Part shown: positions 1 to 40,948 of the stretch, piece after piece
Position numbering within the stretch: the stretch's first letter is position 1
How the letters are laid out: each line of letters opens with the position of its first letter
Assembly (NCBI GenBank): GCA_047495785.1
Contig: JBLDXI010000029.1
Coordinates: forward strand, 1,426,001-1,490,000
Source: Lepidodermella squamata
Taxonomy: Eukaryota > Animalia > Gastrotricha
Direction of reading: 5' to 3'
DNA: 64,000 nt
Notes under the pieces: generated by a model
Told to the model about the DNA's origin: nothing
Databases searched by the model: none
Seen by the model: only the letters and a program-made list of their open reading frames with translations
Program-made: the position numbers and the translations under genes

Positions 1-1525
1 GAAATATGCAACTTGAGAACTGATTGAAATGACTCCATTTGATATAGATTCGCCTCTTTCTCAGGATAATCATGACCTTTATGTGGAGAAGAATTTCGAA
101 ACCTGAAATAACAGCGATAATGATAAACCAGGCCAGCGGGACCTGGCGCGTTGTCAAGCTTGTGCTTGGTGAGTCTTTTGGCATGTCTCCAGGAGTCAGT
201 GCATTCAACTCGATAAAACTGAAAGATCTCGGATCTGTTACATTGGTAGCATTTTCTTGGAGGGATGAGCGATATCTAACCACCAACCCTTTACCTCGAT
301 GCCAATTCATTATCACCTGAGGCTCGTAATCCCACTCTAACCGCTTCGAGTAGCGAAAACTTCCGTATCTCAGTCCTCTGAAGTTGACCAGACTTGCTGA
401 TAGATTCGCTATTTTCATGACAAGTTCCGGGTTTTTGGCATAGTCGCGAAGGGTCAAGTTCATGCGCTTCAGCTGCCGTTCAGTTTCGTTAAGGACGACA
501 ATGCTCTGGAGAGCAGCGTCGTAGCAAGCGTGTCGAAAAACATCCCCATCCCGCGGGGCGACTCCAGTTCGTTGGAGCATCATCTCATCGAAAGATACCA
601 AACTATTTCCGAGTTCATCAACGCCAGAAGAAGTCGTTGGATTAGCAGCTCCAATTAACAATAGCGACCGGAGTTGCTCAAGGTAGACACTTTGGTTACA
701 TCCTGGCGGATACAACTGGTTAGTAACAGGGTCTATAAAGATTATCGGTGAGATTAGGAACATGTACCTCGGCCCACTAAGTCCGTTTCTATGGGCCATG
801 CAAAGAAAAGCAAGAGTTTGCCTGCCATCAGAGCTTTCAAGGGCGAATATCCGAATATCATCCCGTTTAAAGGATAACATCATCTCATCAGAAATATCAA
901 TGAACGCTTCAAATCGTTGCACCCTAAGTCCGGCGGCTACTGCAATGTCGTAGAAGAGTATACCGTTTTCGACTGCAAAACTGTTAGCTAAAGCCACGAC
1001 TATGGCCAGTTTCCGCCAAGGAGTGAGTCTCTTGATGAAATGAAGGCGAACAACTAGGCCGAGCTCTGTTGAACCTCGAACACGATACATATTCGGGTAA
1101 ATGTTTCGTTTAGCTGTCTGAGCTGGGGATGTGCAAGACCCTGCGATCATCACCATGTTCAAATGATGAGCGATCGATCCCCAAGCCTTGCAACCGGGTG
1201 TTGCAATGGCACCAACCGTAACCGGGGCAATGAAGCTGCGGTTCCGTCCTGAATAAGGTAGATTTTCCCGCACAATATTCACCCCAGCTGCGGCTGCGCT
1301 GGCGGATTGAAGATCCTCGTCTCGTATGTCGAACTCGACTTGGTATCCAGGGAGTAGATTTTGTGAGTTTGCCATTTCTCCGACATATTTGACTGCCAGG
1401 CGGCACCTTTCGAAACTCGGTGGATATTGCGCCAAAATTACCAACCGGTCAGGAATCGCAGTGGCGGTGAATTCGAAAACAGTTAGTAACAACACGCACA
1501 ACAGCAGAGTCTGCAAAGCCAGCAT
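1..1525 (-). CDS. Class C (GABA-B-like) GPCR, subfamily A, 3'-truncated by window edge
   Basis: Not in the ORF track because no stop lies in the window. ATG at 1525 reads MLALQTLLLCVLLLTVFEFTATAIPDRLVILAQYPPSFERCRLAVKYVG...GCKAWGSIAH...YPNMYRVRG. Colinear with 11965..14226 at a constant offset of 12701 nt (position 1 = 12702). Confidence 0.9.
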   Translation of the reverse strand, partial: MLALQTLLLCVLLLTVFEFTATAIPDRLVILAQYPPSFERCRLAVKYVGEMANSQNLLPGYQVEFDIRDEDLQSASAAAAGVNIVRENLPYSGRNRSFIAPVTVGAIATPGCKAWGSIAHHLNMVMIAGSCTSPAQTAKRNIYPNMYRVRGSTELGLVVRLHFIKRLTPWRKLAIVVALANSFAVENGILFYDIAVAAGLRVQRFEAFIDISDEMMLSFKRDDIRIFALESSDGRQTLAFLCMAHRNGLSGPRYMFLISPIIFIDPVTNQLYPPGCNQSVYLEQLRSLLLIGAANPTTSSGVDELGNSLVSFDEMMLQRTGVAPRDGDVFRHACYDAALQSIVVLNETERQLKRMNLTLRDYAKNPELVMKIANLSASLVNFRGLRYGSFRYSKRLEWDYEPQVIMNWHRGKGLVVRYRSSLQENATNVTDPRSFSFIELNALTPGDMPKDSPSTSLTTRQVPLAWFIIIAVISGFEILLHIKVMIILRKRRIYIKWSHFNQFSSCIF

Positions 1526-1809
1526 ATTCGCTCTCGTTTTGAGGAGTTGAAGAGTTGAAGAAGCTGCACTGAATTCGTTAGCTCTACAATTTTTCGTGCT
1601 CGAAGCTCCTATTCGAGGCTAATTCTCAATTTGACAAAGCGTGGTTTATGTGTCGGGCGGAATGCTCACGGGCTTAATTTTTCATAAGAAAAGCACGACC
1701 TTATGTAGTTAATTGGCTGAAAAAATGTGTTGGAAATCGAGCAACGCCACTAGTTCTGATTATCCAAGAAATTCAGCAGAGTTTTCTTTTGAACTCAGGC
1801 GGGCAACTA

Positions 1810-3300: not shown

Positions 3301-3472
3301 TAGTTATTAACGTTAGATGACGCACATCCACAGCGTTTTTTATGTTTTTCAATTTTCAATCCACTCAAAAATAATGGGTAATTCGAAACTTCAGAATTCA
3401 TTTATCATTTGCCAACTATAACGCATAATGAATTTATGCGCACAAGGAAGAGGGTTCAAAACGATTGCAATA

Positions 3473-4334
3473 CTACTTCAAGTTAGCGAACCGCACCAAT
3501 TCTATCAATTTCGTCACTTCATTTCTACATTGGAGCAGTTGAATAAAATCACGGGGAAGAGCTTGAACCAAACTTCCTAGCACCATAACCGTCACAGATA
3601 GAGCCAGCGATTTCTCCTCGACAAAATCCGTCTCGCAATCAAGAATTCGAGACAGATACATCAAGACAGCCTCGTATTTACGATAGTTCGAATGGTTGCC
3701 TTCGAAAGCAGGCCAGTTTTCGGGTGGCTCAGTTTTCGCAGCGACGGCAATCAGTAAGTTGCAAGTATTTCGCAGGTCGTAGGTCAGGGGAGCCTCAAGT
3801 TGCCCGACTCTTTCAATAAGAACCCTAAAAATTATCTTTGAAGCTGCTGATTCTAAAAATTCTGCTTGATAATGCCGAGTCATGAAGTAACTCTCGGGTC
3901 GCTTTGACCTTGCAGCCCTCTTTCAGTGCCATTGCGACCATTCGAATGCAAGATATTCAACCCCAGAAGGAACCCGATGGCCGACCTCAAATTCAACAGC
4001 CCCCTAGCAAATCGTATCTTCGGGTGTTGAGAAGAGCATCGATAATGGGTAGTAATTTCTTATCAGCCGGTGACTCGACCAAACGTTCAAATGTTTCGAA
4101 ATCGCCGTCGTTTTTAGCGTGATAAGCTGCGGCGGAGTGGAAGGTTTCAAGCAAGTAAATTTCGTTGAGTTTGGCGTGCCATTTACCGAGGCTCATTGTG
4201 CCATTCGTCACAGCGACGGAGTCGATTGGCTTCAGAGCACGTTGCCATTCGTTTGCGATTGTCAGCTCGCGACTGGCGGATTTCGAGTTGCCAGAGCGCA
4301 TGATTTTGTTGAAAGTCTTCACGTGCTTGGCCAT
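3473..4334 (-). pseudogene. Rearranged/chimeric member of the unknown 'RYDL(I/L)G' family
   Basis: ORF 3993..4334 gives the family N-terminus up to RRYDLLG, which joins directly and out of frame to AVEFEVG; 3473..3883 matches the C-terminus of 14674..15972; the central ~140 codons are missing and there are further indels. Confidence 0.8.
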
Positions 4335-5482: not shown

Positions 5483-6685
5483 TTAATAGTCAAAGGAGAG
5501 AAAAAACGACGTCAGAATAGCAACAAAAATTAATGAACAAGAAATAGCCAGCCAAGTCTCAATTGAAGCCATAGAAGCCACAGATTTCGCTCGATCAATT
5601 TGGCTGTCGATGAAAGTCTTTGGAACAACAACAACCTCATTGACCGCAATTCTCCTCTCCGGATCGACACTGGCCAGAAGATCTTGACAAGCTTTTTCGA
5701 AGCCAGCAGAGTCCGATTCCCGGGTTTCATTCGGAGAGAATTCCTTCAGCGCTTCAGACAGCTTCTCGTCTGCCTTAATTTTCTTCAGTTTGTCGAATTC
5801 ATCTCTGATTTCATCAGCAGCCTTCACAGCTCGGGACAGCTGGACGACAACATTTGTGAAAGCGTTCCCGATTGAATCAACGTCAACGCCTCGAACGGTG
5901 AGCGAAATATTTCGCTGTAAAATCGATTTAAATCGATCTTTACCAAGCCAGAATTTGACAAATTGCGACGGCTGGATGTGATCAATATCAGCGAGAAAAT
6001 ACCGAGATCGATTATTCGCCATAGCCAAACTGCAAGCCGCCATCATCATTCCAACTCGATGGCCCTCTTCGACCTCGCCATTTTGAAAAATAAATGAGGT
6101 CAACTTCAAAAATTGCGATAAAAGTTCATGTGAATTTGCGAGATTATTGAAATGATCTCCATATTCATCGCGATCGGTTAGAAAAATCGCCGATAATAAT
6201 TCGCAGATTTTTTTGATGTAACTCTGCCGCCTCAGGCCTCGTCTCGGGTGTTCGAAAATGAAGAGTAATTTGAACACAAATTGTTGGACGTATTCAGAAT
6301 TTGACAGGAAATATCGCCCGATTAAATCGTAGCGTTTCAGCTCGAGAAGTTCGAAACAAATTGGGACCAGTTTTTGGTCGCCGCTAGATTCGAGCAGGGT
6401 GTCGAAAGCTTCGAAATCGCCACTGCCCCAAGCTCCGAGCATGGCGGACATTTGGATGGATTCAATTGAGACAACTTCAGCCAGTGTCGTTTGTCAGATT
6501 TCGTCGCTGATTGAGCCGTTGAGCAGTTGACCGCGGGAAATAGGTTGAAGTACTCGGCGCCATTCGGTGACGACTTTTTCGGCTAAACAGGCCTCACTAG
6601 CGGCGATGCTGCGGTGAGCTGAATAGGTTTGCCTAGCTCTTGGCTGCCCGCGAAAAATTACTAGTAAAATTATTAGTCTCGGCAT
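5483..6685 (-). pseudogene. 'RYDL(I/L)G' family member with N-terminal hydrophobic leader and C-terminal TM helix; one in-frame TGA (pseudogene or readthrough)
   Basis: ORFs 6494..6685 and 5483..6451 are in the same frame, separated by TGA (6494-6496) and 14 open codons; the TGA aligns with a Trp conserved in the other three members. Confidence 0.7.
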
Positions 6686-6944: not shown

Positions 6945-6983
6945 CAACCCAAACCTAACCCAAATCTAACCCTAACCCTAACC
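6945..6983. repeat. Degenerate (CCCTAA)n-like microsatellite
   Basis: CAACCCAAACCTAACCCAAATCTAACCCTAACCCTAACC, about 6 imperfect units. Confidence 0.6.
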
Positions 6984-8123: not shown

Positions 8124-10394
8124 CTAAATGTGTCGTGTCTTTGCTGGGCAGAAGCGTATTTTCTTCTGATTTTTTCTGATTTTCTTTCTATTTTCGTTAT
8201 AATGGAATACGCCATCAGAAACTGAAGCGATCATCACAATGATGGACAGGAAAAGGTCGAAGTAATAACTGGGCGCAATGATGTAGCCAACAGCTGTCGA
8301 AGCTGCAAAAAGGCTCGATGCTACGGCGAACGACAAATTACGAAGTCGAAATGCCGGGCGTTTTTTCATCAAGTTTCGATGCGACTGCATGCGCAAGATA
8401 AAGATGAAGCACATAAACATCACGGTGACATAGAGACATAGAAGAGTCGCTATCCAATTACCAGCCCACGTAGATTCGCAGACAACTGCATCCGTCGTGA
8501 GATAAGTGTCGATAGCTGGGTCGTAAACAAGAGCAGACTTTGACATTGTCGAAGTTGTGACCGGGTCTACAACGAACCAGATGACCAAGACGATCAAATT
8601 GATAGTGACAAATGCTAAAGTGACGGGTATGACCAGTTTATCGCTGTTTCCAATCAATAGAGGCGAAACAGCTGCCCGTACTGTAAGCGTGCTTTCAGTC
8701 GATCTCAAAACAGCAGACTCAATGAAATGTGAGTTGATGACAAGATATCGGCTATTGGACATGATTTTACCGGCAGACAGCCCGAATAGCAACGAAGCTC
8801 CTATTATCAGGGATGTAAAAGCTAGTTGGCAAGACCTTTCCGAACGCTGATGGAAAGTGGTGGGGAAAGAACAAGCTGCAATAGCGAGAAAACCGTAACC
8901 AGACAGCAAAACAAACGATTTGACAGAAAGTTTCATTTTCCACCAAAGAAATACCGCTAGCATAATGAACTGTGATATGGCTGTCGAAGACACGACTGCG
9001 AAAACAGGTAGCGAGATTCCTTCATGTCTTGTCTCATATCTCGGCGAATCAGAAGGCATGGTCTCTGGACTCATAGGAAAGATAGTTCTGAACACGAAAG
9101 CATCGCTCGCTGTGTTGTTTGTCGCATTTGCTGCTAAAGATCCGACGTAGCGAACTTCAAGACCTATGCCTAGCTTCCATGTCATAACGGCCTGAGGTTC
9201 GTAATCCCATTCCAAGCGATTCGAGTAACGAAAATCCCCGAATCTGAGGCTGCGATACCGTATAGAGCTCGTTGATTCATTCGCGATTTTCATAACTAGT
9301 TCGGGGTGATCCCTGTAGTCCTTTAGGCTCATGTTCATCGCTGATAATCGCTTCTCTGTTTCATTGAGCACCATGATAACCTCTAGGGCGGCGTCGTAGC
9401 AGACGTGGCGAAATCCTTCTCCTACTCGAGACATGTTACTAGCGGCAAGAAGACTCTCAAAGCCAGCCTGTGTATTCCCGAGCTCATCAACAATCGACGA
9501 GAGACCAGGGGCTGCTTCAGCTGATCCAATAATCAACGTTGTTTTAAGCTGCTCCATATACATACTCCTCGTACATCCAGAAGGATAGATTTGGTCGACA
9601 TATGGTTCCAGGAAGGAGATGGCTTGAATCAAAAACATGTATCTTGGTCCGGTGATTCCATGTTTGAAGGCCAAGCATAAAAATGTGATAACCATGACTC
9701 CATCGGAGTTCTCAAAGGCGAAAATTCGAACGTCGTCCTTCCTGAAAGATTCCATTATCTCGGCATTCAAGTCGCTGAATGCCTCGAATGGTTGGATTTT
9801 CAAACCAGAGCTAACCGCTAGACTATGGAAGAATGTACCAGCTTCGACTGTATAAGGATTGCCGAGATCCATCACAATGGCAATTTTTCTCCACGTAGTA
9901 AATTGCTTGATGAAATGAAGACGAGCGATCAGGCCGAGTTCAGCCGGACATCGAACTCGGTACATATTCGGGTACAAATCTCGACGGGCTGTTTGAGACG
10001 GAGCTACACAAGAACCGGCTATCATAACCATGTTCATAAATCCGGCAATAGATCCCCAAGCTTTACATCCAGCTGTAGCGATAGGGCCTACACTTACCGG
10101 AGAGACGTAGTATGATTCGTTTCTCGTGCTGGTCACGTGTTCGTTGATAAATTTAACGCCTTCAGTAGCTGGGTTCCCACTGAAAACAACTTCTCTTCTC
10201 ATATCGTAGTCAACGTGATAGCCGGGTAGTAGATTTCGCTGGTTTACGATATCTCCGACATAGAGCATAGCGTATCGGCATCTTTCTAGCTCTGATGGTA
10301 TTTGGGTTAGTATCAGCAATCGATCCGGCGATTTCGACATGATAGGTAAGATCATCACTGCTAGCACAAAGCTTGACATAGTGAGAATAATCAT
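8124..10394 (-). CDS. Class C (GABA-B-like) GPCR, subfamily A, intronless
   Basis: 756 aa; signal peptide; ANF/Venus-flytrap motifs (NQRNLLPGY, GPIATAGC, YPNMYRV, WRKIAIV, YDAA); PSD linker then seven hydrophobic segments with W-x-x-x-DP after TM4. Confidence 0.9.
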   Translation of the reverse strand: MIILTMSSFVLAVMILPIMSKSPDRLLILTQIPSELERCRYAMLYVGDIVNQRNLLPGYHVDYDMRREVVFSGNPATEGVKFINEHVTSTRNESYYVSPVSVGPIATAGCKAWGSIAGFMNMVMIAGSCVAPSQTARRDLYPNMYRVRCPAELGLIARLHFIKQFTTWRKIAIVMDLGNPYTVEAGTFFHSLAVSSGLKIQPFEAFSDLNAEIMESFRKDDVRIFAFENSDGVMVITFLCLAFKHGITGPRYMFLIQAISFLEPYVDQIYPSGCTRSMYMEQLKTTLIIGSAEAAPGLSSIVDELGNTQAGFESLLAASNMSRVGEGFRHVCYDAALEVIMVLNETEKRLSAMNMSLKDYRDHPELVMKIANESTSSIRYRSLRFGDFRYSNRLEWDYEPQAVMTWKLGIGLEVRYVGSLAANATNNTASDAFVFRTIFPMSPETMPSDSPRYETRHEGISLPVFAVVSSTAISQFIMLAVFLWWKMKLSVKSFVLLSGYGFLAIAACSFPTTFHQRSERSCQLAFTSLIIGASLLFGLSAGKIMSNSRYLVINSHFIESAVLRSTESTLTVRAAVSPLLIGNSDKLVIPVTLAFVTINLIVLVIWFVVDPVTTSTMSKSALVYDPAIDTYLTTDAVVCESTWAGNWIATLLCLYVTVMFMCFIFILRMQSHRNLMKKRPAFRLRNLSFAVASSLFAASTAVGYIIAPSYYFDLFLSIIVMIASVSDGVFHYNENRKKIRKNQKKIRFCPAKTRHI

Positions 10395-11964: not shown

Positions 11965-14226
11965 CTAGAAGCCAGCTTCAGAACTATTCAGTTTGCTGCT
12001 CCAATTTGACCGGATGTGTAGAAAGCTGTTGGCCGCAATGATAATAAGCATTATCAAGGATAAAATGATGTCGTAGCTGAAGTTGGGCGCCAAAATGTAC
12101 CCGATAACGACAGCAGCTATGAAAAGAGAAGAAGTTAACAAACCGGACAGTTTCGCTGCTTTCATTTCTGGGTACCTTGCCGCAAACCGCTGATTTGCTC
12201 GCATTTTCAGAACGCTAACGATTATTAACGCTATAACAAGCGAATGCAGAGTTATCAGAGCACTAAGCCATTTGCCTATCCATTTCGATGAGCATGTAGT
12301 CACCTCTTCATAAACGTAGGTATCCAACTCTGCGACGTACAGCCCAGGCAATCTCAGAGATGTGTGACAATAAACGGGGTCCATGATTAGCCACATCAGG
12401 GCGACTAAGAAATTCGCCAAGGCGAAAACAGACGTAGTCAAAATATCCAATTTGATTTTGACTTTAAACTGCACATGAACGGTTTTCGAAGCTGAGGAAC
12501 TGTAGCTACTTGTACTTACTGGATACGTTCGCCGGCTTTTGGAGCTTAAACTATTCAAGAATACGTTCATTTGTGTTAATCTTGATAGGGTGCCTCCTGA
12601 TAGAAATGAAACCCCAATAGCCGTAGAAATAAATGTCAGAATGCAATCGGAGTTTGTTCGCATTCTAGCTTCCGTCGAGATCAAACAGGCCGATAAAGCC
12701 AGAAATATGCAACTTGAAACCTGGTTGAAATGACTCCAGTCGACATAAACTCCCTCTTTCTTTACGACTATCATGGTTTTCATGTTAAGAAGAATTTCGC
12801 AACTTGAAATAACAGCGACGATGATAAACCAGGCCAGTGGTACTTGCTGTGTTATCAAGCTTGAGCTTGGTGAGTCAGTTGGCATATCTTTACGACTCAT
12901 GGCATTCAACTCGACAAAACTAAAAGATCTCGGATCTGTTATATTGGTAGCATTTTGTTGGAGGGATGAGCGATATCTGACCACCAAGCCTTTACCTCGA
13001 TGCCAGTTCATTATCACCTGAGGCTCGTAATCCCACTCTAACCGCTTCGAGTAGCGAAAACTTCCGTATCTCAGTCCCCTGAAATCGACCCGACTTGCTG
13101 AAAAATTCGCTATTTTCATAACAAGTTCCGGTTGTTTCGCATAGTCGCGAAGGGTCAAGTTCATAAGTTTTAGCTGTCGCTCAGTTTCATTAAGGACGAC
13201 GAGGCTCTCTAGAGCAGCGTCATAGCAAGAATATTGAAAAACATCCCCTTCTCGTGGAGCGATTCCAGATCGTTGGAGCATCATCTCATCGAACGATGCC
13301 AAACTATTTCCGAGCTCATCAAAGCCAGAAGAAGTCGTTGGATTAGTAGCTCCAATTAACAGTAATGACTGTAGTTGCTCAAGATAGATGCTTTGGTTGC
13401 AACCTGGCGGATACAACTCGTCAGGCTTAGGTTCTAGAAATGCTATCGCCGACGCTAAGAACATGTACCTAGACCCACTGAGTCCGTTTCTATGCGCCAT
13501 GCAAAGAAAATTAAGAGTCAGCCTGCCATCGGCTCCTTCAACCGTGAATATCCGAATTTCTTCCCGTTTAAAGGATAACATCTTCTCATCAGAAATATCA
13601 ATGAATGCTTCAAATCGTTGAACCTTAATTCCTGCGGCCACGGCAATGTCATAGAAGAATATCCCCGTTTCAACGGAGAGACTGTTAGCCAAATCCATGA
13701 CTATGGCTAGTTTGCGCCAAGGAGTGAGTCTCTTGATGAAATGAAGGCGAACAATCAGACCAAGTTCAGCTGGACCTCGAACACGGTACATATTCGGGTA
13801 CAGATTTCGTTTAGCTGTTTGAACTGGAGATGTGCAGGATCCTGCGATCATCACCATGTTCATATAATGAGCGATCGAACCCCAAGCCTTGCAACCGGGC
13901 GTTGCAATAGAACCAACCGTAATCGGGGCAATGTAGCTGCTATTCTGTCCTGAATAAGGTAGCTTTTCCCGGAGAAAATTCACACCGGCCGCGGCCGCCC
14001 TGGCGGTTTGAGGATCGTCGTCTCGTATGTCGAAGTCGATTTGGTATCCAGGGAGTAGATTTTGCGAGTTTGCCACTTCGCCAACATATTTCACTGCCAA
14101 GCGACACCTTTCGAAAGTCGGGGGATATTGTGCTAAAATTACCAACCGGTCAAGAACCGCAGCGGCAGTGAATTCGAAAACAATTAGTAGCAAAAAGGAC
14201 AATCGCAGATTCTGTAATGCTAGCAT
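11965..14226 (-). CDS. Class C (GABA-B-like) GPCR, subfamily A, intronless
   Basis: 753 aa with the same architecture (NLLPGY, GCKAWG, YPNMYRV, CYDAALE, 7TM with WLIMDP). Confidence 0.9.
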   Translation of the reverse strand: MLALQNLRLSFLLLIVFEFTAAAVLDRLVILAQYPPTFERCRLAVKYVGEVANSQNLLPGYQIDFDIRDDDPQTARAAAAGVNFLREKLPYSGQNSSYIAPITVGSIATPGCKAWGSIAHYMNMVMIAGSCTSPVQTAKRNLYPNMYRVRGPAELGLIVRLHFIKRLTPWRKLAIVMDLANSLSVETGIFFYDIAVAAGIKVQRFEAFIDISDEKMLSFKREEIRIFTVEGADGRLTLNFLCMAHRNGLSGSRYMFLASAIAFLEPKPDELYPPGCNQSIYLEQLQSLLLIGATNPTTSSGFDELGNSLASFDEMMLQRSGIAPREGDVFQYSCYDAALESLVVLNETERQLKLMNLTLRDYAKQPELVMKIANFSASRVDFRGLRYGSFRYSKRLEWDYEPQVIMNWHRGKGLVVRYRSSLQQNATNITDPRSFSFVELNAMSRKDMPTDSPSSSLITQQVPLAWFIIVAVISSCEILLNMKTMIVVKKEGVYVDWSHFNQVSSCIFLALSACLISTEARMRTNSDCILTFISTAIGVSFLSGGTLSRLTQMNVFLNSLSSKSRRTYPVSTSSYSSSASKTVHVQFKVKIKLDILTTSVFALANFLVALMWLIMDPVYCHTSLRLPGLYVAELDTYVYEEVTTCSSKWIGKWLSALITLHSLVIALIIVSVLKMRANQRFAARYPEMKAAKLSGLLTSSLFIAAVVIGYILAPNFSYDIILSLIMLIIIAANSFLHIRSNWSSKLNSSEAGF

Positions 14227-15927: not shown

Positions 15928-16010
15928 TGTTCCGGATAGAATGTAAAATGTATATAAGCCTAAAATAAACAATTAAAATACAAATAATGATGGATATTGG
16001 CTGGTTTAAG

Positions 16011-30304: not shown

Positions 30305-30470
30305 GGATTACTCTATGGCAAACCAAGGAGAAATATAATTTCCCCCCGATCTGGAACCCCGAGTGAGTTTGGCGCAGCTTCTGTCACGCAATTTTGGCGC
30401 AGCCAAACTCACTCAGGGTTCCAGATCGGGGGGAAATTATATTTCTCCTTGGTTTGCCATAGAGTAATCC
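30305..30470. repeat. Near-perfect palindrome / foldback MITE
   Basis: 69-nt arms (30305-30373, 30402-30470) with about one mismatch and a 28-nt spacer. Confidence 0.85.
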
Positions 30471-31205: not shown

Positions 31206-33530
31206 ATGAAGCACGCAAACTTCGGAGTTTTCCTCATCCTGTTATCTCTCGAGATAAGAAGCGAAGCTGGCAAAACGAATACTCTCCTCTTGCCAGTGTT
31301 CGCTACGACAAATAACGGTGATGCTAGAAGGACATTAGTTTCTCGAATTTCGACGCAAATTCCTATAGACTTTGCGAATTTACGCCCCGAATTTTTACCC
31401 GACTTTCAAGTGGAATATCTCCAATTAAGCGAGCAAAGCCCAGCGAATGTTGTACCAGAAATCATTCGACTTCATAGGGATGGTTATAAAAGGAACGAAA
31501 CAGTCTTCGTTTCTCCATTAATCCCCGGCCCGAGTGTGTCTCAAAGCTGTAGATATCTCGGCCCCATCCTAACCCACATCAATGCCATAGCTCTGAGCGG
31601 TTTCTGCGCAGCTCCGAGTTTGACCGACAGGAAACCCACCCCCAACTTGTACCTATCCCTGAGCACTGGCAAAACTAGCGCCATGGCTATGCTGAATTTT
31701 GCTCGAATCATTGGAAAATGGAGGAAGCTTGCAATTCTCACCAACTCTGCCAACATTTTCGACTACGGCACAGCATTCTTTCTACATGACCAAGCTGTTA
31801 AAAACGGATTCGAGGTGGTTTGGTTCGACATGTTACCAGGGGTCTTCGAGATAAGCACCATTGAATCTTTAGCCCGATCTGAGCCTAGAATCATAGCTCT
31901 CAGCTACGCCGATGCAAATTTGAGCGCAAATGTTCACTGCTCTTTGATTCGCCTCGGCCTAACAGGGCCACGCTATGTTTTCTTCAATTTAATGACCTCG
32001 TTTTCCACAGCTGTTCCATCCGCCTGCACTCAAAGCGAGATGGTTGCCCACCACGCACAAGCTTTCTTTTTCGGAAACTTGGCTGACCCAGAAAACAGAA
32101 CAAGAGATTGTGATTTAGGCTACAACGCGTCTGTTTTCGAACAAGAATTACTGAGGAGGTTGAACACAACAGACCGTAGCGTTTTGCAGCTCCAGTATAC
32201 AAATCATGACTTCGTTATGCGATCTCTCGTGATTCTCAATACTACAGAAACAATTTTGAAGTCACGTTTCAATCTGTCTCTGAGAGATTATTGGAAATAC
32301 CCGGAGTTGATTGCGAGAGTTACCAACCAGACAGTTTTAGAGTCTAAAACAGTTGGTCTAAGAATTGGGCCACTCTCATATGATTCAGGCGGAAATTTAC
32401 TGGGCGATTCGCAGATTATTGCCCAATGGTCCCCGTTTAATGGAATGCAGACTGTTGCCAACGTTCGGCAAATTACGAAACGTGAATCAACTCTCGATTT
32501 TGCACTTGAAAGCTTCACTTTGGATTTTTTACGTTCATTGAGTTGGATTAGAGGAGGTGAACCGCCTAGAGATCAAGCAATTAGAGAGATACTACGCCTC
32601 CGAGTTCCCCAAGACATCTTCTACGTAGTTTTGTCTTTATCAATACTTGCAGCAGTTTCGCAGCTGCTAGTGATCGGAATGTTAACTTTCAACTCAAAAT
32701 CTTCAGTCAAGATGAAATTAGCTGGCTTGATTGGATGTTTAGTGCTCGACAGTTCGGCATGTCTGCATTCTGTCGAGCCGTCAGTAGCGATTTCCCCAGC
32801 ACAAATTGTAACTCTGGTCGTGGGATCTTCATCGGTTTTTGGCGTCCTATCGATCAGACTTATAACTCTGTCTTGGTTCACAAGTGATAAATTTAGAACG
32901 AGAACTCTGTCAAAGACCTATAAAAGATCTTTCTCGGCGAAACGAGCAACAAATGACTTTCATGTCACTCCTGGGATGCTGAAGGCTTGTGACAAGAAGG
33001 GAACTTCAATATTGGCTGGTTTCATGATTCTCAACGCATTACTTGTTTCCTTATGGCTTGCGACTGACTATTTTCGGTGTTCGCTGGTTCTAACCGATAT
33101 GCCCTTCTACGTTGAATCTGAAGATAAAATCATTGAAAAATGGATATATCTCTGCAATACTGAACACATGCCAGCATGGTCAGGAGGCATTTTTGGAATT
33201 CACATCCTCATGCTGATTTTCGGGTCGATTTCAGCCTATAAGATGAGTCATAACAAGAGCTTTACCGCTCAGTACAGCAAGTTTCGAGCTGCCGCGTTTG
33301 GTTGCATCAATTCTCTTGTACTATTGGCTGCTTCAGCGCTTATTGTTGTGATACTCAAGTCACAGCCTGTCAACCAATACATTGCTATAGCTTTTTCGTG
33401 CATCGTGATTTCAGCGATGACATCGTCGACCTGGATCTACGCTCATTTCAAGACGAAAGATGAGATCGTGGCAGCTTTAGAAGCTTCAGCTGGAATTACT
33501 GGAAGCTACTGTGAAACGGGTAACGGCTAA
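31206..33530 (+). CDS. Class C (GABA-B-like) GPCR, subfamily B, intronless
   Basis: 774 aa; signal peptide, FLPDF, GPSVSQSC, PNLYLSLSTGKTSAMAML, WRKLAIL, WIRGGEPPRD, seven TM segments. Confidence 0.9.
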   Translation: MKHANFGVFLILLSLEIRSEAGKTNTLLLPVFATTNNGDARRTLVSRISTQIPIDFANLRPEFLPDFQVEYLQLSEQSPANVVPEIIRLHRDGYKRNETVFVSPLIPGPSVSQSCRYLGPILTHINAIALSGFCAAPSLTDRKPTPNLYLSLSTGKTSAMAMLNFARIIGKWRKLAILTNSANIFDYGTAFFLHDQAVKNGFEVVWFDMLPGVFEISTIESLARSEPRIIALSYADANLSANVHCSLIRLGLTGPRYVFFNLMTSFSTAVPSACTQSEMVAHHAQAFFFGNLADPENRTRDCDLGYNASVFEQELLRRLNTTDRSVLQLQYTNHDFVMRSLVILNTTETILKSRFNLSLRDYWKYPELIARVTNQTVLESKTVGLRIGPLSYDSGGNLLGDSQIIAQWSPFNGMQTVANVRQITKRESTLDFALESFTLDFLRSLSWIRGGEPPRDQAIREILRLRVPQDIFYVVLSLSILAAVSQLLVIGMLTFNSKSSVKMKLAGLIGCLVLDSSACLHSVEPSVAISPAQIVTLVVGSSSVFGVLSIRLITLSWFTSDKFRTRTLSKTYKRSFSAKRATNDFHVTPGMLKACDKKGTSILAGFMILNALLVSLWLATDYFRCSLVLTDMPFYVESEDKIIEKWIYLCNTEHMPAWSGGIFGIHILMLIFGSISAYKMSHNKSFTAQYSKFRAAAFGCINSLVLLAASALIVVILKSQPVNQYIAIAFSCIVISAMTSSTWIYAHFKTKDEIVAALEASAGITGSYCETGNG

Positions 33531-35401: not shown

Positions 35402-35732
35402 ACCTTTTGAGCCTATAATATAAGGCTACGGCATTGTCAAAATGTTACCCCTGATGTACTGAATCGAATCCGTGAAGTTGATAGTTTTCAATATTGAAAC
35501 TTTGAACTGTAATTCTTCAATGATTACCTACTGTATTATTCAGGTTATATTTGATTGAAATGCGAAGTTACGATCACTAACAAAATAAAATGTTCGTTGG
35601 CAACTTTAAATCCTGGTCAACCAGAGCGCGGCATGAGAACCTATAGACATGTCGTGGTCCTGGGTCGTAAGACTACAATGCTAGATCCCTCTTTTTTTAT
35701 TCATTCATGATTCAATCTGACCAATTCGAGTT

Positions 35733-38009
35733 TTACGCATGGTTTGGCAAGACCTTGAATGCAGAGCCCCAATTCATGATAACGGAATGAGCAAGTGACT
35801 GAATGACTATCGCTGTCGATACAAACAGCTCGCGCATCGTTGATGACGCAGCTGTGAGCGCAACAGCAAGTGTTGCATCGAATAGTGACGTAATCAAAAC
35901 GCAGACGATCATCAGCTTTTTCACCTCTGGATAGTGCTTCAAAAGAGGCTGAGATCGCTGATTGATGACAGAAAATAGCCCTGTCAACAACAGGCCGAGG
36001 TTCATGGCGATTGCAGGCGCTAACCAGGCTTGCATTTGACCAGATGCGCAGTAGACATAAAATTCTCGAATATATGTATCAGTTTCCACAATGTACTTAC
36101 TATTAGTATTTGGATTAGTTGTCACAGTCAAATGATCAAAGATCATCCAGAAAATCGCTATAGCCAAATTGATTGTTGAGAAAGTTATCGGCAGTACCAA
36201 AACGTCTTTTTTCTTTAGCTTAAGCTTCGGAATCTTTAATTCAGGCTTCCCTTTCTTCGGTTTTTTTATGATAGCCTTATTACTTTTGATAAACCGAAGC
36301 GACGCAAGCAATCGAAAGATGATTACGGCGTAGAATAAGGAGCAGCCAAATGTTAAGGAAAGAATGCCAATGATACATGTTGGTTGGCTCCTTTTGGCTG
36401 ATGGGAGAACCAATAAAGCAGCTCCAAGTGTCATGAATGTGTAGCTTAAGCATGGACAGATTTCTTTAACAGCAAGTTTTCGTTTACGGAGCTCATTGAT
36501 GCGCTTCGACTCAAGTGAAACTTGAACTAAGAATGAAGCAGATGATGCGATTACTATAATGACGAATGCCGCCAGATTCACCCCAGTTTCGATAGTCGCA
36601 TAATTAGGACCGTCTTTAGGCATCGAGCTGAAATCAAATGGATTAAGCGCTTGAATAGAGAAAGAGTTCAAAGATGTAGTATCTTTTGCGTCGGTTTTCA
36701 CTGAAATTGAGTACCTTGCCTGGACACCTGATTTTCGAGACCAAGTAACAACCATTTGAGGCTGATAATCCATTTCAACCCGTTGCGAGTATTGAAACTT
36801 TCCGAAACGAATACCGTTAAAGCTGATATTTCTCGCGCTATCATTAGCTGCAAGCATGACAGCTCTAGGTTTGCTTGAATAGTCCCGTAAAGTCAGATTT
36901 TGCCTCTTCAACAGTTTCTCAGCGCTGTCGAGTGTTAGAACTCCCATCAGAGCAGCGTCGTAACATGCCTGCCTGAATGCAAAATCGATTGATCGTGAGG
37001 CATTTGATCTTAGCGCTAGGGTGCTCTCAAACTCCTGAGCTGTGTATCCCAACGAATCTCTGCCATCTGTCTTGATGACAGAAGAATGACCAGCGCCGAC
37101 TAGAATTGTGATTTCGAGTTGCTCTAAATACTGAGACCTCGTGCAGCCGTTTTGAGTAATCAAAACATCAGCTATTGAACTCGGATCGTTGAAAAATAGC
37201 ATTGAAATAAAAAATCTATATCGAGGCCCTGTGATGCCATACTTGAAACATCGGCACATGAAGCGGAATATGTAGAAATAGTCAGAGGCATCGAAACTGA
37301 TAATGCGAACATCCTGTCGGATCAGCGATTCATAAACTTCATCTCCAAAGTCGAGGGCAGTTTCGAATGTGATAACCGTCATATTTTCGGCTATTGCCAT
37401 TTCGTAAAACGATCTTGCTGCGTCGAACCCGTTTGAATTTCCGGTCTCGGCGTGAATTGCTGCTAATACGGCTATTCTAGACCATTTTGCTAGGCTTTTA
37501 ATGGCGATAAGACGACTGGTTAGTTCGATCTGATTTCCAGCTCGAATTCGGTACATGTTACGGTAGATGTCCCGTCTAGCTGTGTGGATTGATGAGATGC
37601 AGCTGAGACCTATCATCACTGCATTCATGTGATGGGCCGTCGACCCCCAAGCCTTGCAGCCAGCCGTTGTTACTATGCCGATTGTAACAGGGGCTATGAA
37701 CTCGCCCGGCTCTCGATCTTTCCATAGGGCTCTGATAGCTGCAGATGCTGCAAAGTTCGAGCCAGGGCCTTCATCGACTGGTTCGATGTCGACGTGGTAA
37801 TCCGGTAGAATGTCAGTCCTATTATTGACCTCATCAACAACCATTTGCTGTGCGGCGGGGCATGAAACTAGGGTGAACGGCTTCGCGTCAGAAATGGTTA
37901 AAAGTGATAGCATTTTCAGCTTGTAAGGCTTCTGGGGTGATGTAACCTCATCAAGACTAACGGATGTTACAACAACCAGAACTTTCAAAAGCTGCATCAT
38001 CAACGCCAT
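35733..38009 (-). CDS. Class C (GABA-B-like) GPCR, subfamily A (divergent), intronless
   Basis: 758 aa; VNNRTDILPDY, GCKAWG, YRNMYRIR, CYDAAL, VEMDYQPQ, 7TM. Confidence 0.9.
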   Translation of the reverse strand: MALMMQLLKVLVVVTSVSLDEVTSPQKPYKLKMLSLLTISDAKPFTLVSCPAAQQMVVDEVNNRTDILPDYHVDIEPVDEGPGSNFAASAAIRALWKDREPGEFIAPVTIGIVTTAGCKAWGSTAHHMNAVMIGLSCISSIHTARRDIYRNMYRIRAGNQIELTSRLIAIKSLAKWSRIAVLAAIHAETGNSNGFDAARSFYEMAIAENMTVITFETALDFGDEVYESLIRQDVRIISFDASDYFYIFRFMCRCFKYGITGPRYRFFISMLFFNDPSSIADVLITQNGCTRSQYLEQLEITILVGAGHSSVIKTDGRDSLGYTAQEFESTLALRSNASRSIDFAFRQACYDAALMGVLTLDSAEKLLKRQNLTLRDYSSKPRAVMLAANDSARNISFNGIRFGKFQYSQRVEMDYQPQMVVTWSRKSGVQARYSISVKTDAKDTTSLNSFSIQALNPFDFSSMPKDGPNYATIETGVNLAAFVIIVIASSASFLVQVSLESKRINELRKRKLAVKEICPCLSYTFMTLGAALLVLPSAKRSQPTCIIGILSLTFGCSLFYAVIIFRLLASLRFIKSNKAIIKKPKKGKPELKIPKLKLKKKDVLVLPITFSTINLAIAIFWMIFDHLTVTTNPNTNSKYIVETDTYIREFYVYCASGQMQAWLAPAIAMNLGLLLTGLFSVINQRSQPLLKHYPEVKKLMIVCVLITSLFDATLAVALTAASSTMRELFVSTAIVIQSLAHSVIMNWGSAFKVLPNHA

Positions 38010-38629
38010 TACGTCGCTTTTATCATTAAACCGTATCTCGCGTGCGATGATTAATGAAGCTGTAAATTGTGCTTGATGTTCGCATAGTGAATTTTGCGAA
38101 AGAAAATCGTGACTTAATGCGAAAATTTCCTAATTATTATATTCGATTCTTACTTCTTACTTGCCAGCTCATTTTAAGATCAGCTCAAGTAAGCCGAGTA
38201 TTTATATGTACAGTTGGCTTACAGCTATTCAATTTCACGCCTCCAAGTTCGGACTTCGACCATAACATGTACACTGTGATGTAATCTGTAATCTCTATGC
38301 TGACACTTGATATGGCTCGTTTGTAGAAACCCCTACCACCTTATCCCCTAAGACGTAAGACCTAGCAATATTGTGATCACAGAATTCCGTATAGGAATAC
38401 ATGGGTCCAACTTAATGAAAGGGGCCTAAATCACAGCAAGGAATTTGGAACATTTAGACAAAAATGTTCACTGCACAACATCTATCTATGGATTTTAGCA
38501 GTTTGCTGTAATCCAATCGCTTATCGTCTGTGTAAACGGCAAAAATTAGCCTATCACTAGCTGCTAATGCTCCCGGTCCATCCTATATCAACAATAATCC
38601 AGAGGCGATAATCTCTTATTTGCTTTCAA

Positions 38630-40948
38630 ATGAAGCTAAACGTATTCAGAGGTTTTCTGCTTTTCGCAACTGCGGAATTTTTATGTGCGCTGGATGATCG
38701 AATCTTAGCACAGCCTAAGAAGAAGTATATTCTTAAGCTTCCGAATTACATTCTCTACTCTGTCGGAGAACCCAAGCGTATTGCAGCCACGGCCATTACA
38801 GCTCAAATCCCTGTCGACTACGTCAACTCAAGGTTTGACATTCTACCAGACTATTTCGTTGAATTAAATACGGTAGACGAGCAATACTCTTTGAACTCCG
38901 TGGCTGGAACGTTCAAAGCTATCCGAGAAGCAGATAGCTACAACGCCACGACATTCCTATCTCCACTGTTCGTAGGTCCCGTTGTCTCGCAGGGTTGTAA
39001 GATGGTCGGCTCTATGTTATCTCACATTAATGCCGTAGGAATTAGCGGATACTGTGCCTCGCTAACTTTAGCTGACCGTAAATCAACTCCTAATCTATAC
39101 CTATCATTTAGCACCAGCAAAACAAGTGCTATGGCTATGCTAAGATTCGCTCGTGATATCGGGGACTGGAAGCGGCTTGCTATTCTCGCGAATTCGATCA
39201 ACATTTTGGACTACGGCACGGCCTTTTTCGTGCATGAGCAGGCTGTAAAAAACGATTTCGAAGTTGCTTGGTTCGATATGCTACCAGGGGTGGTTGAAAT
39301 CAGTACACTCGAGTCGTTAGCTCGCCATGAGCCAAGGATTATCATTCTAAGTTACGCTGATGGAGTCCTTGCCGCAAACGTACACTGTGGGCTGATACGC
39401 CTAGGAATCACTGGGGCGAGATATGTTTTTCTCAATATAATCACGTCATTCTCGATTCAGACACCTCCGGCTTGTTCGCAAGATGAGATGCTACAACATT
39501 ATCGGCAGGTTTATTACTTTGGAAGCTCTCCTACGCCGGAGAATAGAACGAGACCGTGTGGCTTTGGTTATTCTGCTGATTATCTGGATCAGCAAATTTT
39601 CAAGCGGATGAACACGACTGACCCTGGTGTTCTGCTGCAACAATACACAAACCATGACGTTTTAATGCGTTCCCTTTTGGTTCTTAACATGACAGAGACA
39701 ATCCTTAGATCTGAATACAACTTATCACTCAAAGATTACTCGAAATATCCGGAGTTGATCGCCTCAGTAACTAACCGAACGGTTTTGCAGTCGAAGATTA
39801 CTGGAATCCGCACAGGAACGTTGTCCTATGACTCGGGAGGTAATTTGATAGGCGATACTCAGATCATAGCTCATTGGTCACCCTCAGACGGAATGGCAAC
39901 TATTGCGCTGGTCAGGCAAAACCAAAGCTCAACATTCGATCTTAAAAGCTTCAGCCTAGACTTTGTCCGAAGTCCGAAATGGATTTTAGGCAAACCGCCC
40001 AAAGATCGACCTACGAAGGAGATATATCGTCTTCAGGTCTCTTCTAACGTACTTGACGGCGTAATGTCTTTGTCTGCTCTATCTGGCGTTATGCAATTGG
40101 TCACGTCTGGAGTATTGATTTACAAGCATAAAACAAGCGCGTTTCTAAGACTGAAACTATCCGGTCTAATTGGATGTCTTTTTCTAGATGCTTCAGCAAT
40201 TCTACACACAATCGAACTTTCTGAACATGTTGTAATGGGGCAAATTTTTACCTTAGTAATTGGCGCATCTGCAGTTTTCGGGGCTTTGTCAATCCGACTT
40301 ATCGCCCTGTCAAGTTTCGCATCTGAAACTTTTCGATCAAGGGCGCCAATCCGAAGGAGTGGAATAATTTCAAAAGTTAGCAGACCTTCAAATCTAACCC
40401 GTGGAAAGTTGAAGGGTGTAGATAAGCGTGGATCTATCTTCTTAATCGTATTTGTAGTCCTTAATGGAGCATTGGCGGCAACATGGTTAACGAGTGACAA
40501 TTTTGCATGCTCTTCATTTCGATCCGATAATCCGATGTACTTCGATGTGGAAGATAAAATAGTTGAGAAATGGCTCACTATTTGCAGTACTGATCACTTT
40601 ACGGCATGGTCCGGCTCAATTATCTGTATCCAATCATTATTACTGGTCGCAGGTTTAATTGCCTGTTACAAAATCAGCCACAACAAGAGGTTGATAAGAC
40701 GTTTTCGGGAATTCTTCCCAGCTGCGATTGGATGCATCAACGCCGGGGTTTTATTCGTTGCTTCTATTCTTGTAGTTGTGATATTAGGTTCGCAACCTGT
40801 TAATCAGTTGATAACGATATCGTTTTCGATACTGATAATTTCTGCATCTTCAGCGTCACTTTGGATGTATTCCATTTTTAAGAAACATGTCCGCTCGACT
40901 CGAATTCATCAATTACGCTTTACCAATATCGGTTTTGCAAAGCTTTGA
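38630..40948 (+). CDS. Class C (GABA-B-like) GPCR, subfamily B, intronless
   Basis: 772 aa; VNSRFDILPDY, PNLYLSFSTSKTSAMAML, WILGKPPKD, 7TM; closest to 31206..33530. Confidence 0.9.
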   Translation: MKLNVFRGFLLFATAEFLCALDDRILAQPKKKYILKLPNYILYSVGEPKRIAATAITAQIPVDYVNSRFDILPDYFVELNTVDEQYSLNSVAGTFKAIREADSYNATTFLSPLFVGPVVSQGCKMVGSMLSHINAVGISGYCASLTLADRKSTPNLYLSFSTSKTSAMAMLRFARDIGDWKRLAILANSINILDYGTAFFVHEQAVKNDFEVAWFDMLPGVVEISTLESLARHEPRIIILSYADGVLAANVHCGLIRLGITGARYVFLNIITSFSIQTPPACSQDEMLQHYRQVYYFGSSPTPENRTRPCGFGYSADYLDQQIFKRMNTTDPGVLLQQYTNHDVLMRSLLVLNMTETILRSEYNLSLKDYSKYPELIASVTNRTVLQSKITGIRTGTLSYDSGGNLIGDTQIIAHWSPSDGMATIALVRQNQSSTFDLKSFSLDFVRSPKWILGKPPKDRPTKEIYRLQVSSNVLDGVMSLSALSGVMQLVTSGVLIYKHKTSAFLRLKLSGLIGCLFLDASAILHTIELSEHVVMGQIFTLVIGASAVFGALSIRLIALSSFASETFRSRAPIRRSGIISKVSRPSNLTRGKLKGVDKRGSIFLIVFVVLNGALAATWLTSDNFACSSFRSDNPMYFDVEDKIVEKWLTICSTDHFTAWSGSIICIQSLLLVAGLIACYKISHNKRLIRRFREFFPAAIGCINAGVLFVASILVVVILGSQPVNQLITISFSILIISASSASLWMYSIFKKHVRSTRIHQLRFTNIGFAKL

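What the first reader, a model, noticed from the sequence alone, without database searches (positions are those of the whole stretch)
1..40948. Cluster of seven intronless, highly divergent GABA-B-like class C GPCRs: candidate lineage-specific chemoreceptor array
Seen: seven single-exon receptor genes within 41 kb (intact copies 753-774 aa), in a genome whose other genes carry many short introns; recent and old duplicates and a disrupted copy coexist; C-tails are very short. Known: Venus flytrap joined to 7TM without a cysteine-rich domain is the GABA-B architecture; canonical GABA-B genes are few, conserved, intron-rich and have a C-terminal coiled coil. Inference: birth-and-death evolution, tandem clustering and divergent flytrap motifs fit a chemosensory receptor family analogous to V2R/T1R but built independently from a GABA-B-like scaffold.
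Basis: partly seen in the sequence, partly recalled or inferred. Interest (0 to 1): 0.85.

Follow-up and report, generated by a model that had tools for sequence, protein, structure and literature searches.

The report
Tandem array of orphan GABA-B-like receptors
A 41-kb stretch of an unidentified small-intron animal genome holds seven intron-free copies (five intact) of a fast-evolving, unnamed branch of GABA-B-type receptors that lack the GABA-binding residues and the usual G-protein-coupling motifs. The expansion is real, but a smell or taste role is plausible and unproven.

Summary
The window has seven single-ORF Venus-flytrap + 7TM genes between 1 and 40948. Five are intact (753-774 aa), one is cut by the window start, and one is a multi-lesion pseudogene.

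An AlphaFold model (pLDDT 92) matches GABA-B1/B2 structures (TM up to 0.74/0.82) and not mGlu/CaSR (about 0.4). There is no cysteine-rich domain and almost no C-tail.

The genes belong to an unnamed clade of about 46 clusters, otherwise seen only on metagenome contigs. That clade sits outside the clade holding canonical GABA-B1 and B2.

The window copies form two local clades, A on the minus strand and B on the plus strand. A DNA-level segmental duplication is visible.

- The 7TM half, not the flytrap, is the faster-evolving half.
- Only one of seven GABA contact residues is kept, and every cytoplasmic-face 7TM motif conserved in GABA-B kin is missing.
- An eighth, intron-bearing class C gene lies at 54.3-56.9 kb.

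A chemosensory role remains a hypothesis; nothing here tests it directly.

Other unchecked notes of this scan report further GABA-B-like and flytrap arrays elsewhere in this genome.

The parts
1..1525 (-). R1, subfamily A receptor, N-terminal 508 aa; the rest runs off the window start
   Evidence: tblastn gives 80% identity to R3. HMM E 7e-225. The start codon was placed from the translation.
3473..4334 (-). Broken copy of the interleaved 'X' gene family, part of the R1 duplication unit
   Evidence: Two ORF pieces are 53-62% identical to the C-terminal part of X at 14674-15972. DNA homology: 3339-4000 matches 14541-15180 at 76.5%.
5483..6451 (-). X-family gene: helical, no Pfam match
8124..10394 (-). 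R2, subfamily A receptor, intact, 756 aa, single ORF
11965..14226 (-). R3, subfamily A receptor, intact, 753 aa; this is the modelled copy
   Evidence: AF2 pLDDT 92.4. Fold matches to GABA-B.
14674..15972 (-). X-family gene, 432 aa, directly upstream of R3 on the same strand
17779..19065 (-). X-family gene, 428 aa
   Evidence: The atlas search gives only weak ARM/TPR-like leads.
24935..27411 (+). R5, subfamily B pseudogene: a 618-aa ORF (flytrap to TM3), then a broken TM4-TM7 part
   Evidence: HMM pieces at 24926-26788 and 26947-27408 lie in different frames. Three-frame reading.
26734..26892 (.). Palindromic insertion of about 160 nt that breaks R5 between TM3 and TM4 and carries the first stop
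   Evidence: Inverted repeats I1 and I2. Self-blast inverted match. Sequence read.
31206..33530 (+). R7, subfamily B receptor, intact, 774 aa
   Evidence: The RNA-labelled run X1 holds 29% of its sampled words.
35733..38009 (-). R8, subfamily A receptor, intact, 758 aa, head-to-head with R9
   Evidence: Low-depth X1 contigs cover this ORF but not the spacer or R9, and show no skipped segment.
38630..40948 (+). R9, subfamily B receptor, intact, 772 aa
   Evidence: No X1 coverage.
54294..56926 (+). Eighth class C gene (R10) with at least four predicted short introns. It belongs to the sister clade of the intronless family. The 3' end is not settled.
   Evidence: Exon-wise HMM hits. GT..AG candidates that keep the frame open. 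The spliced model is 806 aa with E 6e-62. Tree placement.

Best explanation
The locus is a locally grown array of a lineage-restricted, intronless clade of GABA-B-type class C receptors.

Shown:
- Each intact gene encodes a signal peptide, a Venus flytrap, a short stalk, a seven-helix bundle and almost no tail.
- The fold is that of GABA-B subunits.
- The family is distinct from GB1 and GB2.
- Copies arose by DNA-level tandem and segmental duplication, and one has decayed.
- Intact copies are under purifying selection.

Inferred:
- They are dimeric cell-surface sensors for one or more ligands that are not GABA.
- Flytrap closure is passed to the membrane domain through the conserved stalk/ECL2 sheet and the TM3-ECL2 disulfide.
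- The cytoplasmic face has lost every motif that GABA-B kin conserve, and it evolves faster than the flytrap. Output is therefore probably either delegated to a partner subunit or uses a non-canonical route, rather than classical autonomous G-protein coupling.
- A sensory (chemoreceptive) use is one possible biological role, not a demonstrated one.
For: Identity and fold:
- Pfam ANF_receptor plus 7tm_3.
- The best PDB sequence hits are GB1 and GB2, E about 1e-9.
- AF2 model has pLDDT 92.4 and pTM 0.81.
- Foldseek PDB ranks 1-26 are all GABA-B chains, with TM up to 0.74/0.82, against 0.39-0.41 for mGlu and CaSR.
- The Swiss-Prot AFDB top 8 are GB1/GB2.

Family:
- 46 representatives reach E<1e-30 in an exhaustive HMMER search. 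The ten top-ranked ones looked up are unnamed ENA metagenome proteins.
- Those examined are single ORFs.
- The family is separated from the GB1/GB2 clade at 99% SH-aLRT.

Local growth:
- Clade A has 100% support and clade B 93-95%.
- Forcing all seven into one clade is not rejected and gives a better likelihood (AU p 0.69).
- Segmental duplication: 1-1800 matches 12702-14505 at 83.8%, including flank and neighbour gene.

Selection:
- R1/R3 dN/dS is 0.27, and no sliding window exceeds 0.55.
- Five ORFs of about 2.3 kb stay open at saturated dS.

Not GABA:
- Seven GB1b contact residues were verified on a canonical GB1 (P0160).
- Only the S130 equivalent is kept as S/T, and W278 becomes F.
- H170 becomes R/L/F, E349 becomes F/L/Q, Y250 becomes A/S, and W65 is absent.

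Coupling face:
- The ICL1 SxPxLNN, TM5 FLAWETR, TM6 LNDS..YN and TM7 F.PK motifs are conserved at >=70% (a few positions at >=50%) in 32 GABA-B kin and absent from the family.
- The TM3 Cys, TM4 W..D, ECL2 D..C and the pre-TM1 W..P.D are kept.

Rates:
- Mean identity is 16% in the 7TM against 24% in the flytrap; the control gives 36% against 32%.
- The tree-length ratio is 1.44 against 0.94.
Against: - No functional, localisation or interaction data exist.
- Loss of conserved motifs does not prove loss of G-protein coupling. A basic residue at the K3.50 position is still present in all five intact window copies.
- No candidate conserved partner subunit was identified.
- The RNA evidence is thin. 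It consists of low-depth contigs of one run whose RNA label is itself a guess.
- The tree is unrooted, since no mGlu/CaSR outgroup was available. 'Outside GB1/GB2' therefore holds only if the root is not inside the family.
Confidence: 0.6

Rival explanations
1. One reading: the array is a chemosensory receptor repertoire, analogous to V2R/OlfC/T1R but built on a GABA-B-like scaffold. Each paralogue would be tuned to a different environmental small molecule and expressed in a few sensory cells.
For: - The array is tandem, its clades are species-specific, and a pseudogene sits among intact copies.
- The family is large in a related organism, with 46 clusters at 50% identity.
- The genes are intronless, as many chemoreceptor GPCR families are (established knowledge for OR, TAAR, T2R and V1R).
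- Five of the seven positions equivalent to GABA contacts fall in the 65th-89th percentile of flytrap variability, on an otherwise conserved scaffold.
- The bulk-RNA signal is low and patchy: R7 and R8 are seen, while R2, R3 and R9 are not. This fits expression in few cells.
Against: - The flytrap is the more conserved half in 99% of pairs, the opposite of V2R-type families (the V2R pattern is from established knowledge).
- No window of the youngest pair has dN/dS above 0.55.
- The canonical coupling motifs are lost.
- Seven pocket positions are too few for a statistical claim.
- No expression site is known.
Confidence: 0.3
2. Subfamilies A and B are obligate heterodimer partners, in the manner of GB1/GB2. 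They would be co-expressed from shared spacers such as the 620-bp R8/R9 head-to-head spacer.
For: - There are two deep subfamilies, segregated by strand in one locus, with R8 and R9 lying head to head.
- GABA-B, T1R and V2R receptors work as heteromers (established knowledge).
Against: - In the one RNA-labelled run, R8 is covered and R9 is not.
- On four 13-19 kb loci of relatives the receptor is a singleton, with no paired second member.
- A and B together may be one species-specific clade. That argues against an ancient, conserved division of labour.
- Neither subfamily keeps the coupling motifs of a GB2-like signalling subunit.
Confidence: 0.15
3. The 7TM is no longer a signalling module. 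The proteins would be membrane-anchored flytrap binding proteins (scavengers, decoys or adhesion/recognition molecules), and the helices would be constrained only to stay in the membrane.
For: - The 7TM evolves 1.4-1.5 times faster than the flytrap, and its cytoplasmic face has no conserved position.
- The tail is 10-30 aa.
- Unchecked scan notes report flytrap-only secreted relatives in this genome.
- R5 keeps a long open flytrap ORF after losing its 7TM.
Against: - All seven helices, the TM3-ECL2 disulfide, the long ECL2 hairpin and the stalk motif are retained. The membrane domain is modelled at pLDDT above 90.
- That is more structure than an anchor needs. A single helix would do, as in flytrap kinases.
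Confidence: 0.15

Closest known systems
Metabotropic GABA-B receptor subunits GB1 and GB2 (class C GPCR)
   Same: - The domain order and fold match: flytrap joined through a short stalk to the 7TM with no cysteine-rich domain.
- A long ECL2 hairpin and the TM3-ECL2 disulfide are present.
- GB1 and GB2 are the best sequence and structure matches.
   Different: - Identity is 12-16%.
- The family forms a separate clade.
- Six of seven GABA contacts are changed.
- There is no coiled coil and no long tail.
- The conserved ICL1, TM5, TM6 and TM7 motifs are absent.
- The genes are intronless and multi-copy.
Lineage-specific GABA-B-type expansions in sponges (Francis et al. 2017, bioRxiv 10.1101/120998; Krishnan et al. 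2014, PMC4302439)
   Same: - Many paralogues form taxon-specific clades.
- GABA-coordinating residues are not conserved.
- The relation to bilaterian GB1/GB2 is unstable.
   Different: - The host lineage differs. It is a bilaterian-like genome with 47-62-nt introns, and the nearest named kin are spiralian and other animal GB-like proteins.
- Intronless structure, tandem arrangement, faster 7TM evolution and motif loss were shown here. The passages read from those papers do not report them.
V2R/OlfC and T1R chemosensory class C receptors of vertebrates
   Same: - They are class C flytrap receptors.
- They are multigene families with birth-and-death evolution and clusters (established knowledge).
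   Different: - Those receptors have a cysteine-rich domain and are multi-exon.
- They keep the class C 7TM motifs, and their variability is concentrated in the flytrap.
- Here there is no CRD, a single exon, and a 7TM more variable than the flytrap.
Dictyostelium Grl (metabotropic glutamate receptor-like / GABA-B-like) family
   Same: It is a multi-copy GABA-B-like class C family outside the nervous-system context. GrlE is fold match 9 in Swiss-Prot.
   Different: TM-score is only 0.44, against 0.72-0.75 for animal GB1/GB2. No specific relationship is shown.

Membership tests
Class C (glutamate-family) GPCR | Venus flytrap (ANF_receptor / PBP type I) N-terminal domain | tested here: met
   Pfam PF01094 scores above the gathering cut-off in all six copies scanned. 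The AF2 model shows a two-lobe alpha/beta domain.
Class C (glutamate-family) GPCR | 7tm_3-type seven-helix bundle with a TM3-ECL2 disulfide | tested here: met
   PF00003 scores above cut-off in R7, R8 and R9, but not in R2 or R3. Seven helices are modelled. The Cys pair is conserved in 26-31 of 32 family members.
Class C (glutamate-family) GPCR | Conserved cytoplasmic-face motifs: basic residue at 3.50, acidic residue at the start of TM6, TM7 xPKxY | tested here: not met
   F.PK, LNDS and FLAWETR are absent from the whole family. A basic residue at the 3.50 position is kept in the window copies only.
GABA-B receptor subfamily | Flytrap joined directly to the 7TM, with no cysteine-rich (NCD3G) domain | tested here: met
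   The linker is about 25 aa and Cys-free. There is no NCD3G hit. Whole-chain TM-score is 0.6-0.74 to GABA-B against about 0.4 to mGlu and CaSR.
GABA-B receptor subfamily | Orthology to GB1 or GB2 | tested here: not met
   The family of 38-42 rows is split from the clade holding Protopterus and Haliotis GB1 and Lingula GB2 at 99% SH-aLRT. The tree is unrooted.
GABA-B receptor subfamily | GABA-contacting residues of GB1 (GB1b W65, S130, S153, H170, Y250, W278, E349) | tested here: not met
   All seven positions were verified in canonical P0160. The family keeps only S/T at S130 and F at W278.
GABA-B receptor subfamily | C-terminal coiled coil mediating heterodimerisation | tested here: not met
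   Only 10-30 aa follow TM7. There is no GBR2_CC hit.
V2R/T1R-type chemosensory class C receptors | Cysteine-rich domain between flytrap and 7TM | tested here: not met
V2R/T1R-type chemosensory class C receptors | Variability concentrated in the flytrap, with a conserved 7TM | tested here: not met
   The 7TM is less conserved than the flytrap in 99% of pairs, and the tree-length ratio is 1.44. The pocket-position variability test is inconclusive, with only seven sites.
V2R/T1R-type chemosensory class C receptors | Expression restricted to sensory cells | not testable with these tools
   Only bulk-run contigs were available. R7 and R8 are weakly present, while R2, R3 and R9 are not seen.

The most novel reading that the evidence does not exclude
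The family may be an undescribed branch of class C receptors in which the seven-helix domain has been freed from G-protein-coupling constraints. Dozens of paralogues would then act as ligand-tuning subunits that signal through a conserved co-receptor or a new route. Together they would form the main soluble-chemical sensing repertoire of a micro-invertebrate lineage, as an independent invention of a flytrap-based chemosensory system.
Probability: 0.2. Interest if true: 0.7.

Novelty: new variant of a known kind. Interest (0 to 1): 0.45.

Why it matters
Lineage-specific class C expansions are known in sponges and vertebrates. This clade has no named member among those looked up in public protein sets, and it combines three unusual traits:
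- It is intronless in an intron-rich genome.
- All cytoplasmic 7TM signatures are lost while the extracellular coupling elements are kept.
- The usual conservation pattern is reversed, so that the 7TM evolves faster than the flytrap.

If the proteins signal, they would show how a flytrap-to-7TM module can work without the canonical switch residues. If they are chemoreceptors, they would give a handle on chemical sensing in a poorly studied animal group. If neither holds, the locus is still a clean example of birth-and-death evolution, with a dated segmental duplication and a pseudogene killed by a palindromic insertion.

Tried and rejected
- **Word-indexed protein search.** A search with R3 found nothing. 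The exhaustive profile search was needed.
- **First AF2 run.** With only 5 sequences it gave pLDDT 56 and was discarded. It was rerun with 88 sequences.
- **A/B split older than the species split.** I first read the trees as showing that subfamily B is sister to metagenome proteins P0001/3/5/9/11. The AU test does not reject all seven window copies as one clade, and that tree has the higher likelihood. The claim is withdrawn as unresolved.
- **Interleaved X genes as flytrap-only relatives.** This is rejected. They have no HMM relation to the receptors, their alignment looks helical, and there is only a faint Peripla_BP_5 hit at E 0.017.
- **Conserved X-receptor gene pair.** This is rejected. 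No X homologue lies on seven relatives' loci.
- **A single long intron to explain the R5 break.** This is rejected. The gap holds a palindrome with a stop, a 13-nt duplication and another stop.
- **Naming the organism.** This failed. Run and organism names are coded, and the WD40 neighbour only matches generic WDR49/64-like clusters.
- **Literature searches.** They found no description of this family.

Full report
**What is in the window**

A tblastn of each intact product against the window, and an HMM built from the five intact products, both find seven copies between 1 and 40948.
- R1: 1-1525 (-), running off the window start.
- R2: 8124-10394 (-).
- R3: 11965-14226 (-).
- R5: 24935-27411 (+).
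- R7: 31206-33530 (+).
- R8: 35733-38009 (-).
- R9: 38630-40948 (+).

The five intact ORFs are 753-774 aa. Every copy scanned against Pfam (R1 was not) passes the ANF_receptor threshold. R7, R8 and R9 also pass 7tm_3, while R2 and R3 do not.

Hydropathy shows a hydrophobic N-terminus, a flytrap of about 410 aa and a Cys-free linker of about 25 aa. Seven hydrophobic segments follow, with only 10-30 residues after the last one.

The copies fall into two groups. A is R1, R2, R3 and R8, all on the minus strand. B is R5, R7 and R9, all on the plus strand. A and B are about 25% identical to each other.

Neighbouring genes do have short introns. The WD40 gene at 20045-22188 has a 47-nt GTAAGT..TTTAG intron.

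**What they are**

The best solved-structure relatives by sequence are GABA-B1 and GABA-B2, at E about 1e-9.

An AlphaFold model of R3 built on an 88-sequence alignment is confident, with pLDDT 92.4 and pTM 0.81.
- Foldseek against the PDB gives GABA-B chains at ranks 1-26, with TM-scores up to 0.74 by query and 0.82 by target (7c7s_B).
- mGlu and CaSR chains, which carry a cysteine-rich spacer, reach only 0.39-0.41 over the whole chain.
- The reviewed-protein AlphaFold library gives the same order.

The GABA-B-type architecture is thus shown, at 12-16% sequence identity.

**Relatives**

An exhaustive profile search of 1.84 billion representatives gave 46 proteins at E<1e-30.
- The ten top-ranked ones looked up are unnamed proteins from ENA metagenome assemblies.
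- Five that were traced come from the same set of samples.
- On those animal-like contigs, which also carry an activin receptor, TAF1 and SOCS-box genes, each receptor is again a single ORF. It is a singleton on loci of 13-19 kb, not part of a tandem array.
- They are only 25-33% identical to the window copies.

The next tier consists of proteins named GABA-B1(-like) or GABA-B2(-like) from nemerteans, molluscs, brachiopods, annelids, hemichordates, echinoderms, corals and a lungfish.

FastTree and IQ-TREE (PMSF) trees separate the family of 38-42 rows from the clade that contains canonical GB1 and GB2, with 99% SH-aLRT. The trees have no mGlu/CaSR outgroup, so the root is unknown.

Within the family, the window's A copies form one clade (100%) and the B copies another (93-95%).

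The free trees place B next to five metagenome proteins. An AU test does not reject a single clade of all seven window copies (p 0.69), and that constrained tree has the higher likelihood. Whether the A/B split predates the species split is therefore open. The whole array may have grown in place.

**How the array grew and decayed**

DNA comparison shows a segmental duplication.
- 1-1800 matches 12702-14505 at 83.8%. This runs past the receptor start codon into the 5' flank.
- 3339-4000 matches 14541-15180 at 76.5%. This covers part of the neighbouring X gene.

These copies therefore arose by DNA duplication of multi-gene units, not by repeated retroposition.

R1/R3 have dS 0.40 and dN/dS 0.27. 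In 50-codon windows the ratio ranges from 0.11 to 0.55. All older pairs are saturated at silent sites yet keep 2.3-kb ORFs.

R5 is a genuine pseudogene with three lesions.
- A palindrome of about 160 nt at 26734-26892 sits between TM3 and TM4 and carries the first stop.
- A 13-nt tandem duplication lies at 26946-26968.
- A further in-frame TGA follows.

**Ligand site**

I located the seven GABA contacts of GB1b (W65, S130, S153, H170, Y250, W278, E349; numbering from my knowledge of the 2013 GB1b flytrap structures). I used their spacing from the CSSVS motif in a canonical GB1 returned by the tools (P0160). All seven expected residues were found at the predicted offsets.

In the five intact window copies the equivalents are as follows.

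| GB1b contact | Window copies |
|---|---|
| S130 | T/T/T/S/S |
| S153 | T/V/I/A/A |
| H170 | R/R/R/L/F |
| Y250 | A/S/S/A/A |
| W278 | F in all five |
| E349 | F/F/F/L/Q |
| W65 | gap, T or R |

Both amine-binding residues are gone, so GABA is very unlikely to be the ligand.

Five of these seven positions lie in the 65th-89th percentile of flytrap variability across 32 family members. That is compatible with different ligands for different paralogues, but the sites are too few to be a test.

**Membrane domain**

I aligned 32 family members with 32 GABA-B-tier proteins.
- The tier conserves, at >=70% (a few positions at >=50%), an ICL1 SxPxLNN motif, a TM3 GF..G..F.K motif, TM5 FLAWETR, TM6 LNDS..YN and TM7 F.PK.
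- The family conserves none of these.
- The family does keep the TM3 Cys, the TM4 W..D, the ECL2 D..C, a TM5 Trp and the pre-TM1 W..P.D stalk motif.

So the extracellular coupling elements survive while the cytoplasmic face is unconstrained.

The 7TM is also the faster-evolving half.

| Measure | Family | GABA-B tier |
|---|---|---|
| Mean pairwise identity, 7TM vs flytrap | 16% vs 24% (7TM lower in 99% of 496 pairs) | 36% vs 32% |
| Column entropy, 7TM vs flytrap | 2.86 vs 2.49 | 2.32 vs 2.42 |
| ML tree length, 7TM/flytrap | 1.44 | 0.94 |

**Expression**

One run labelled RNA (the label itself is a guess) holds 29% of the sampled words of R7.

When laid on 35500-41100, its short low-depth contigs lie on R8 (apart from the first ~70 nt of the stretch laid, 35500-35568). 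They do not cover the 620-bp spacer or R9, and no segment is skipped. It does not hold R2 or R3 above the reporting threshold.

This is weak evidence for low, copy-specific transcription and against internal splicing. It says nothing about cell type.

A DNA run of what seems to be another individual or strain covers the whole stretch. It shows two contig versions at 37092-37278, one with 11 differences in 187 nt.

**Interpretation**

The identity of the locus as a local expansion of an unnamed, intronless, GABA-B-type class C clade is well supported.

The mechanism is inferred. A dimeric flytrap sensor for non-GABA ligands would have its closure transmitted by the conserved stalk/ECL2 elements. 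Its output would be either delegated to a partner or non-canonical.

The chemoreceptor reading remains possible, at about 0.3. It is favoured by array dynamics, family size, intronlessness and patchy low expression. It is disfavoured by the conservation pattern and by uniform purifying selection in the youngest pair.

The A/B heterodimer idea is weakened in three ways.
- R8 is seen in RNA without R9.
- Relatives carry singleton loci.
- A+B may be monophyletic.

**Comparison and novelty**

Lineage-specific GABA-B-type expansions with unconserved GABA residues are described in sponges (10.1101/120998; PMC4302439). The phenomenon is therefore a known kind.

Three full-text searches found no description of this clade or of its motif loss.

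Other unchecked notes of this scan report more GABA-B-like and flytrap arrays in the same genome. One has near-identical flytraps on divergent 7TM modules, which agrees with the rate asymmetry measured here.

**Additional finding**

An eighth class C gene lies at 54294-56926 (+).
- Exon-wise HMM hits in changing frames and frame-preserving GT..AG candidates give at least four introns of 49-62 nt.
- The spliced model is 806 aa, with E 6e-62 against the broad profile.
- It groups at 95-98% with four database proteins that form the sister clade of the intronless family (82% support for the sister relation).

An intron-bearing relative thus sits 13 kb from the intronless array.

Noticed in passing
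window 54294-56926 (+): An eighth class C flytrap+7TM gene with at least four predicted short introns. It sits in the sister clade of the intronless family. It lies inside a span that another scan note describes as globins.
   Followed up: partly
window 3473-4334, 5483-6451, 14674-15972, 17779-19065 (-): An interleaved family of helical proteins of about 430 aa with no Pfam match. It was co-duplicated with the R1/R3 unit. It is not found next to the receptors on relatives' contigs, and the atlas gives only weak ARM/TPR-like leads.
   Followed up: partly
window 26734-26892 and 30305-30470: Two palindromic elements of 145-170 nt (82-87% arm complementarity). One breaks R5 and the other lies upstream of R7. 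They may be foldback or MITE-like insertions. Their relatedness was not tested.
   Followed up: no
window 37092-37278 and 38519-38755: In DNA run X2 there are two contig versions at about half depth each. One differs from the window at 11 of 187 positions inside the R8 flytrap, around residues 244-306. The youngest pair also has its highest dN/dS near this region. This could be divergent alleles or a collapsed paralogue.
   Followed up: no
window 20045-22188 (-): A multi-exon WD40 gene (WDR49/WDR64-like by atlas features) separates the minus-strand and plus-strand halves of the receptor array.
   Followed up: partly
window 47567-48843 (+): ORFs with C2H2 zinc fingers (Pfam E 4e-6 to 8e-9).
   Followed up: no
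window 51165-51521 (-): An ORF with a marginal Globin hit (E 3e-4, just below the Pfam cut-off). This is consistent with another scan note on globins here.
   Followed up: no
L005:351-2456 and L006:1311-2540: On relatives' contigs a 701-aa 7tm_1 (rhodopsin-type) single-ORF gene and ankyrin-like genes lie near the family member. Long single-ORF GPCR genes may be common in that organism.
   Followed up: no
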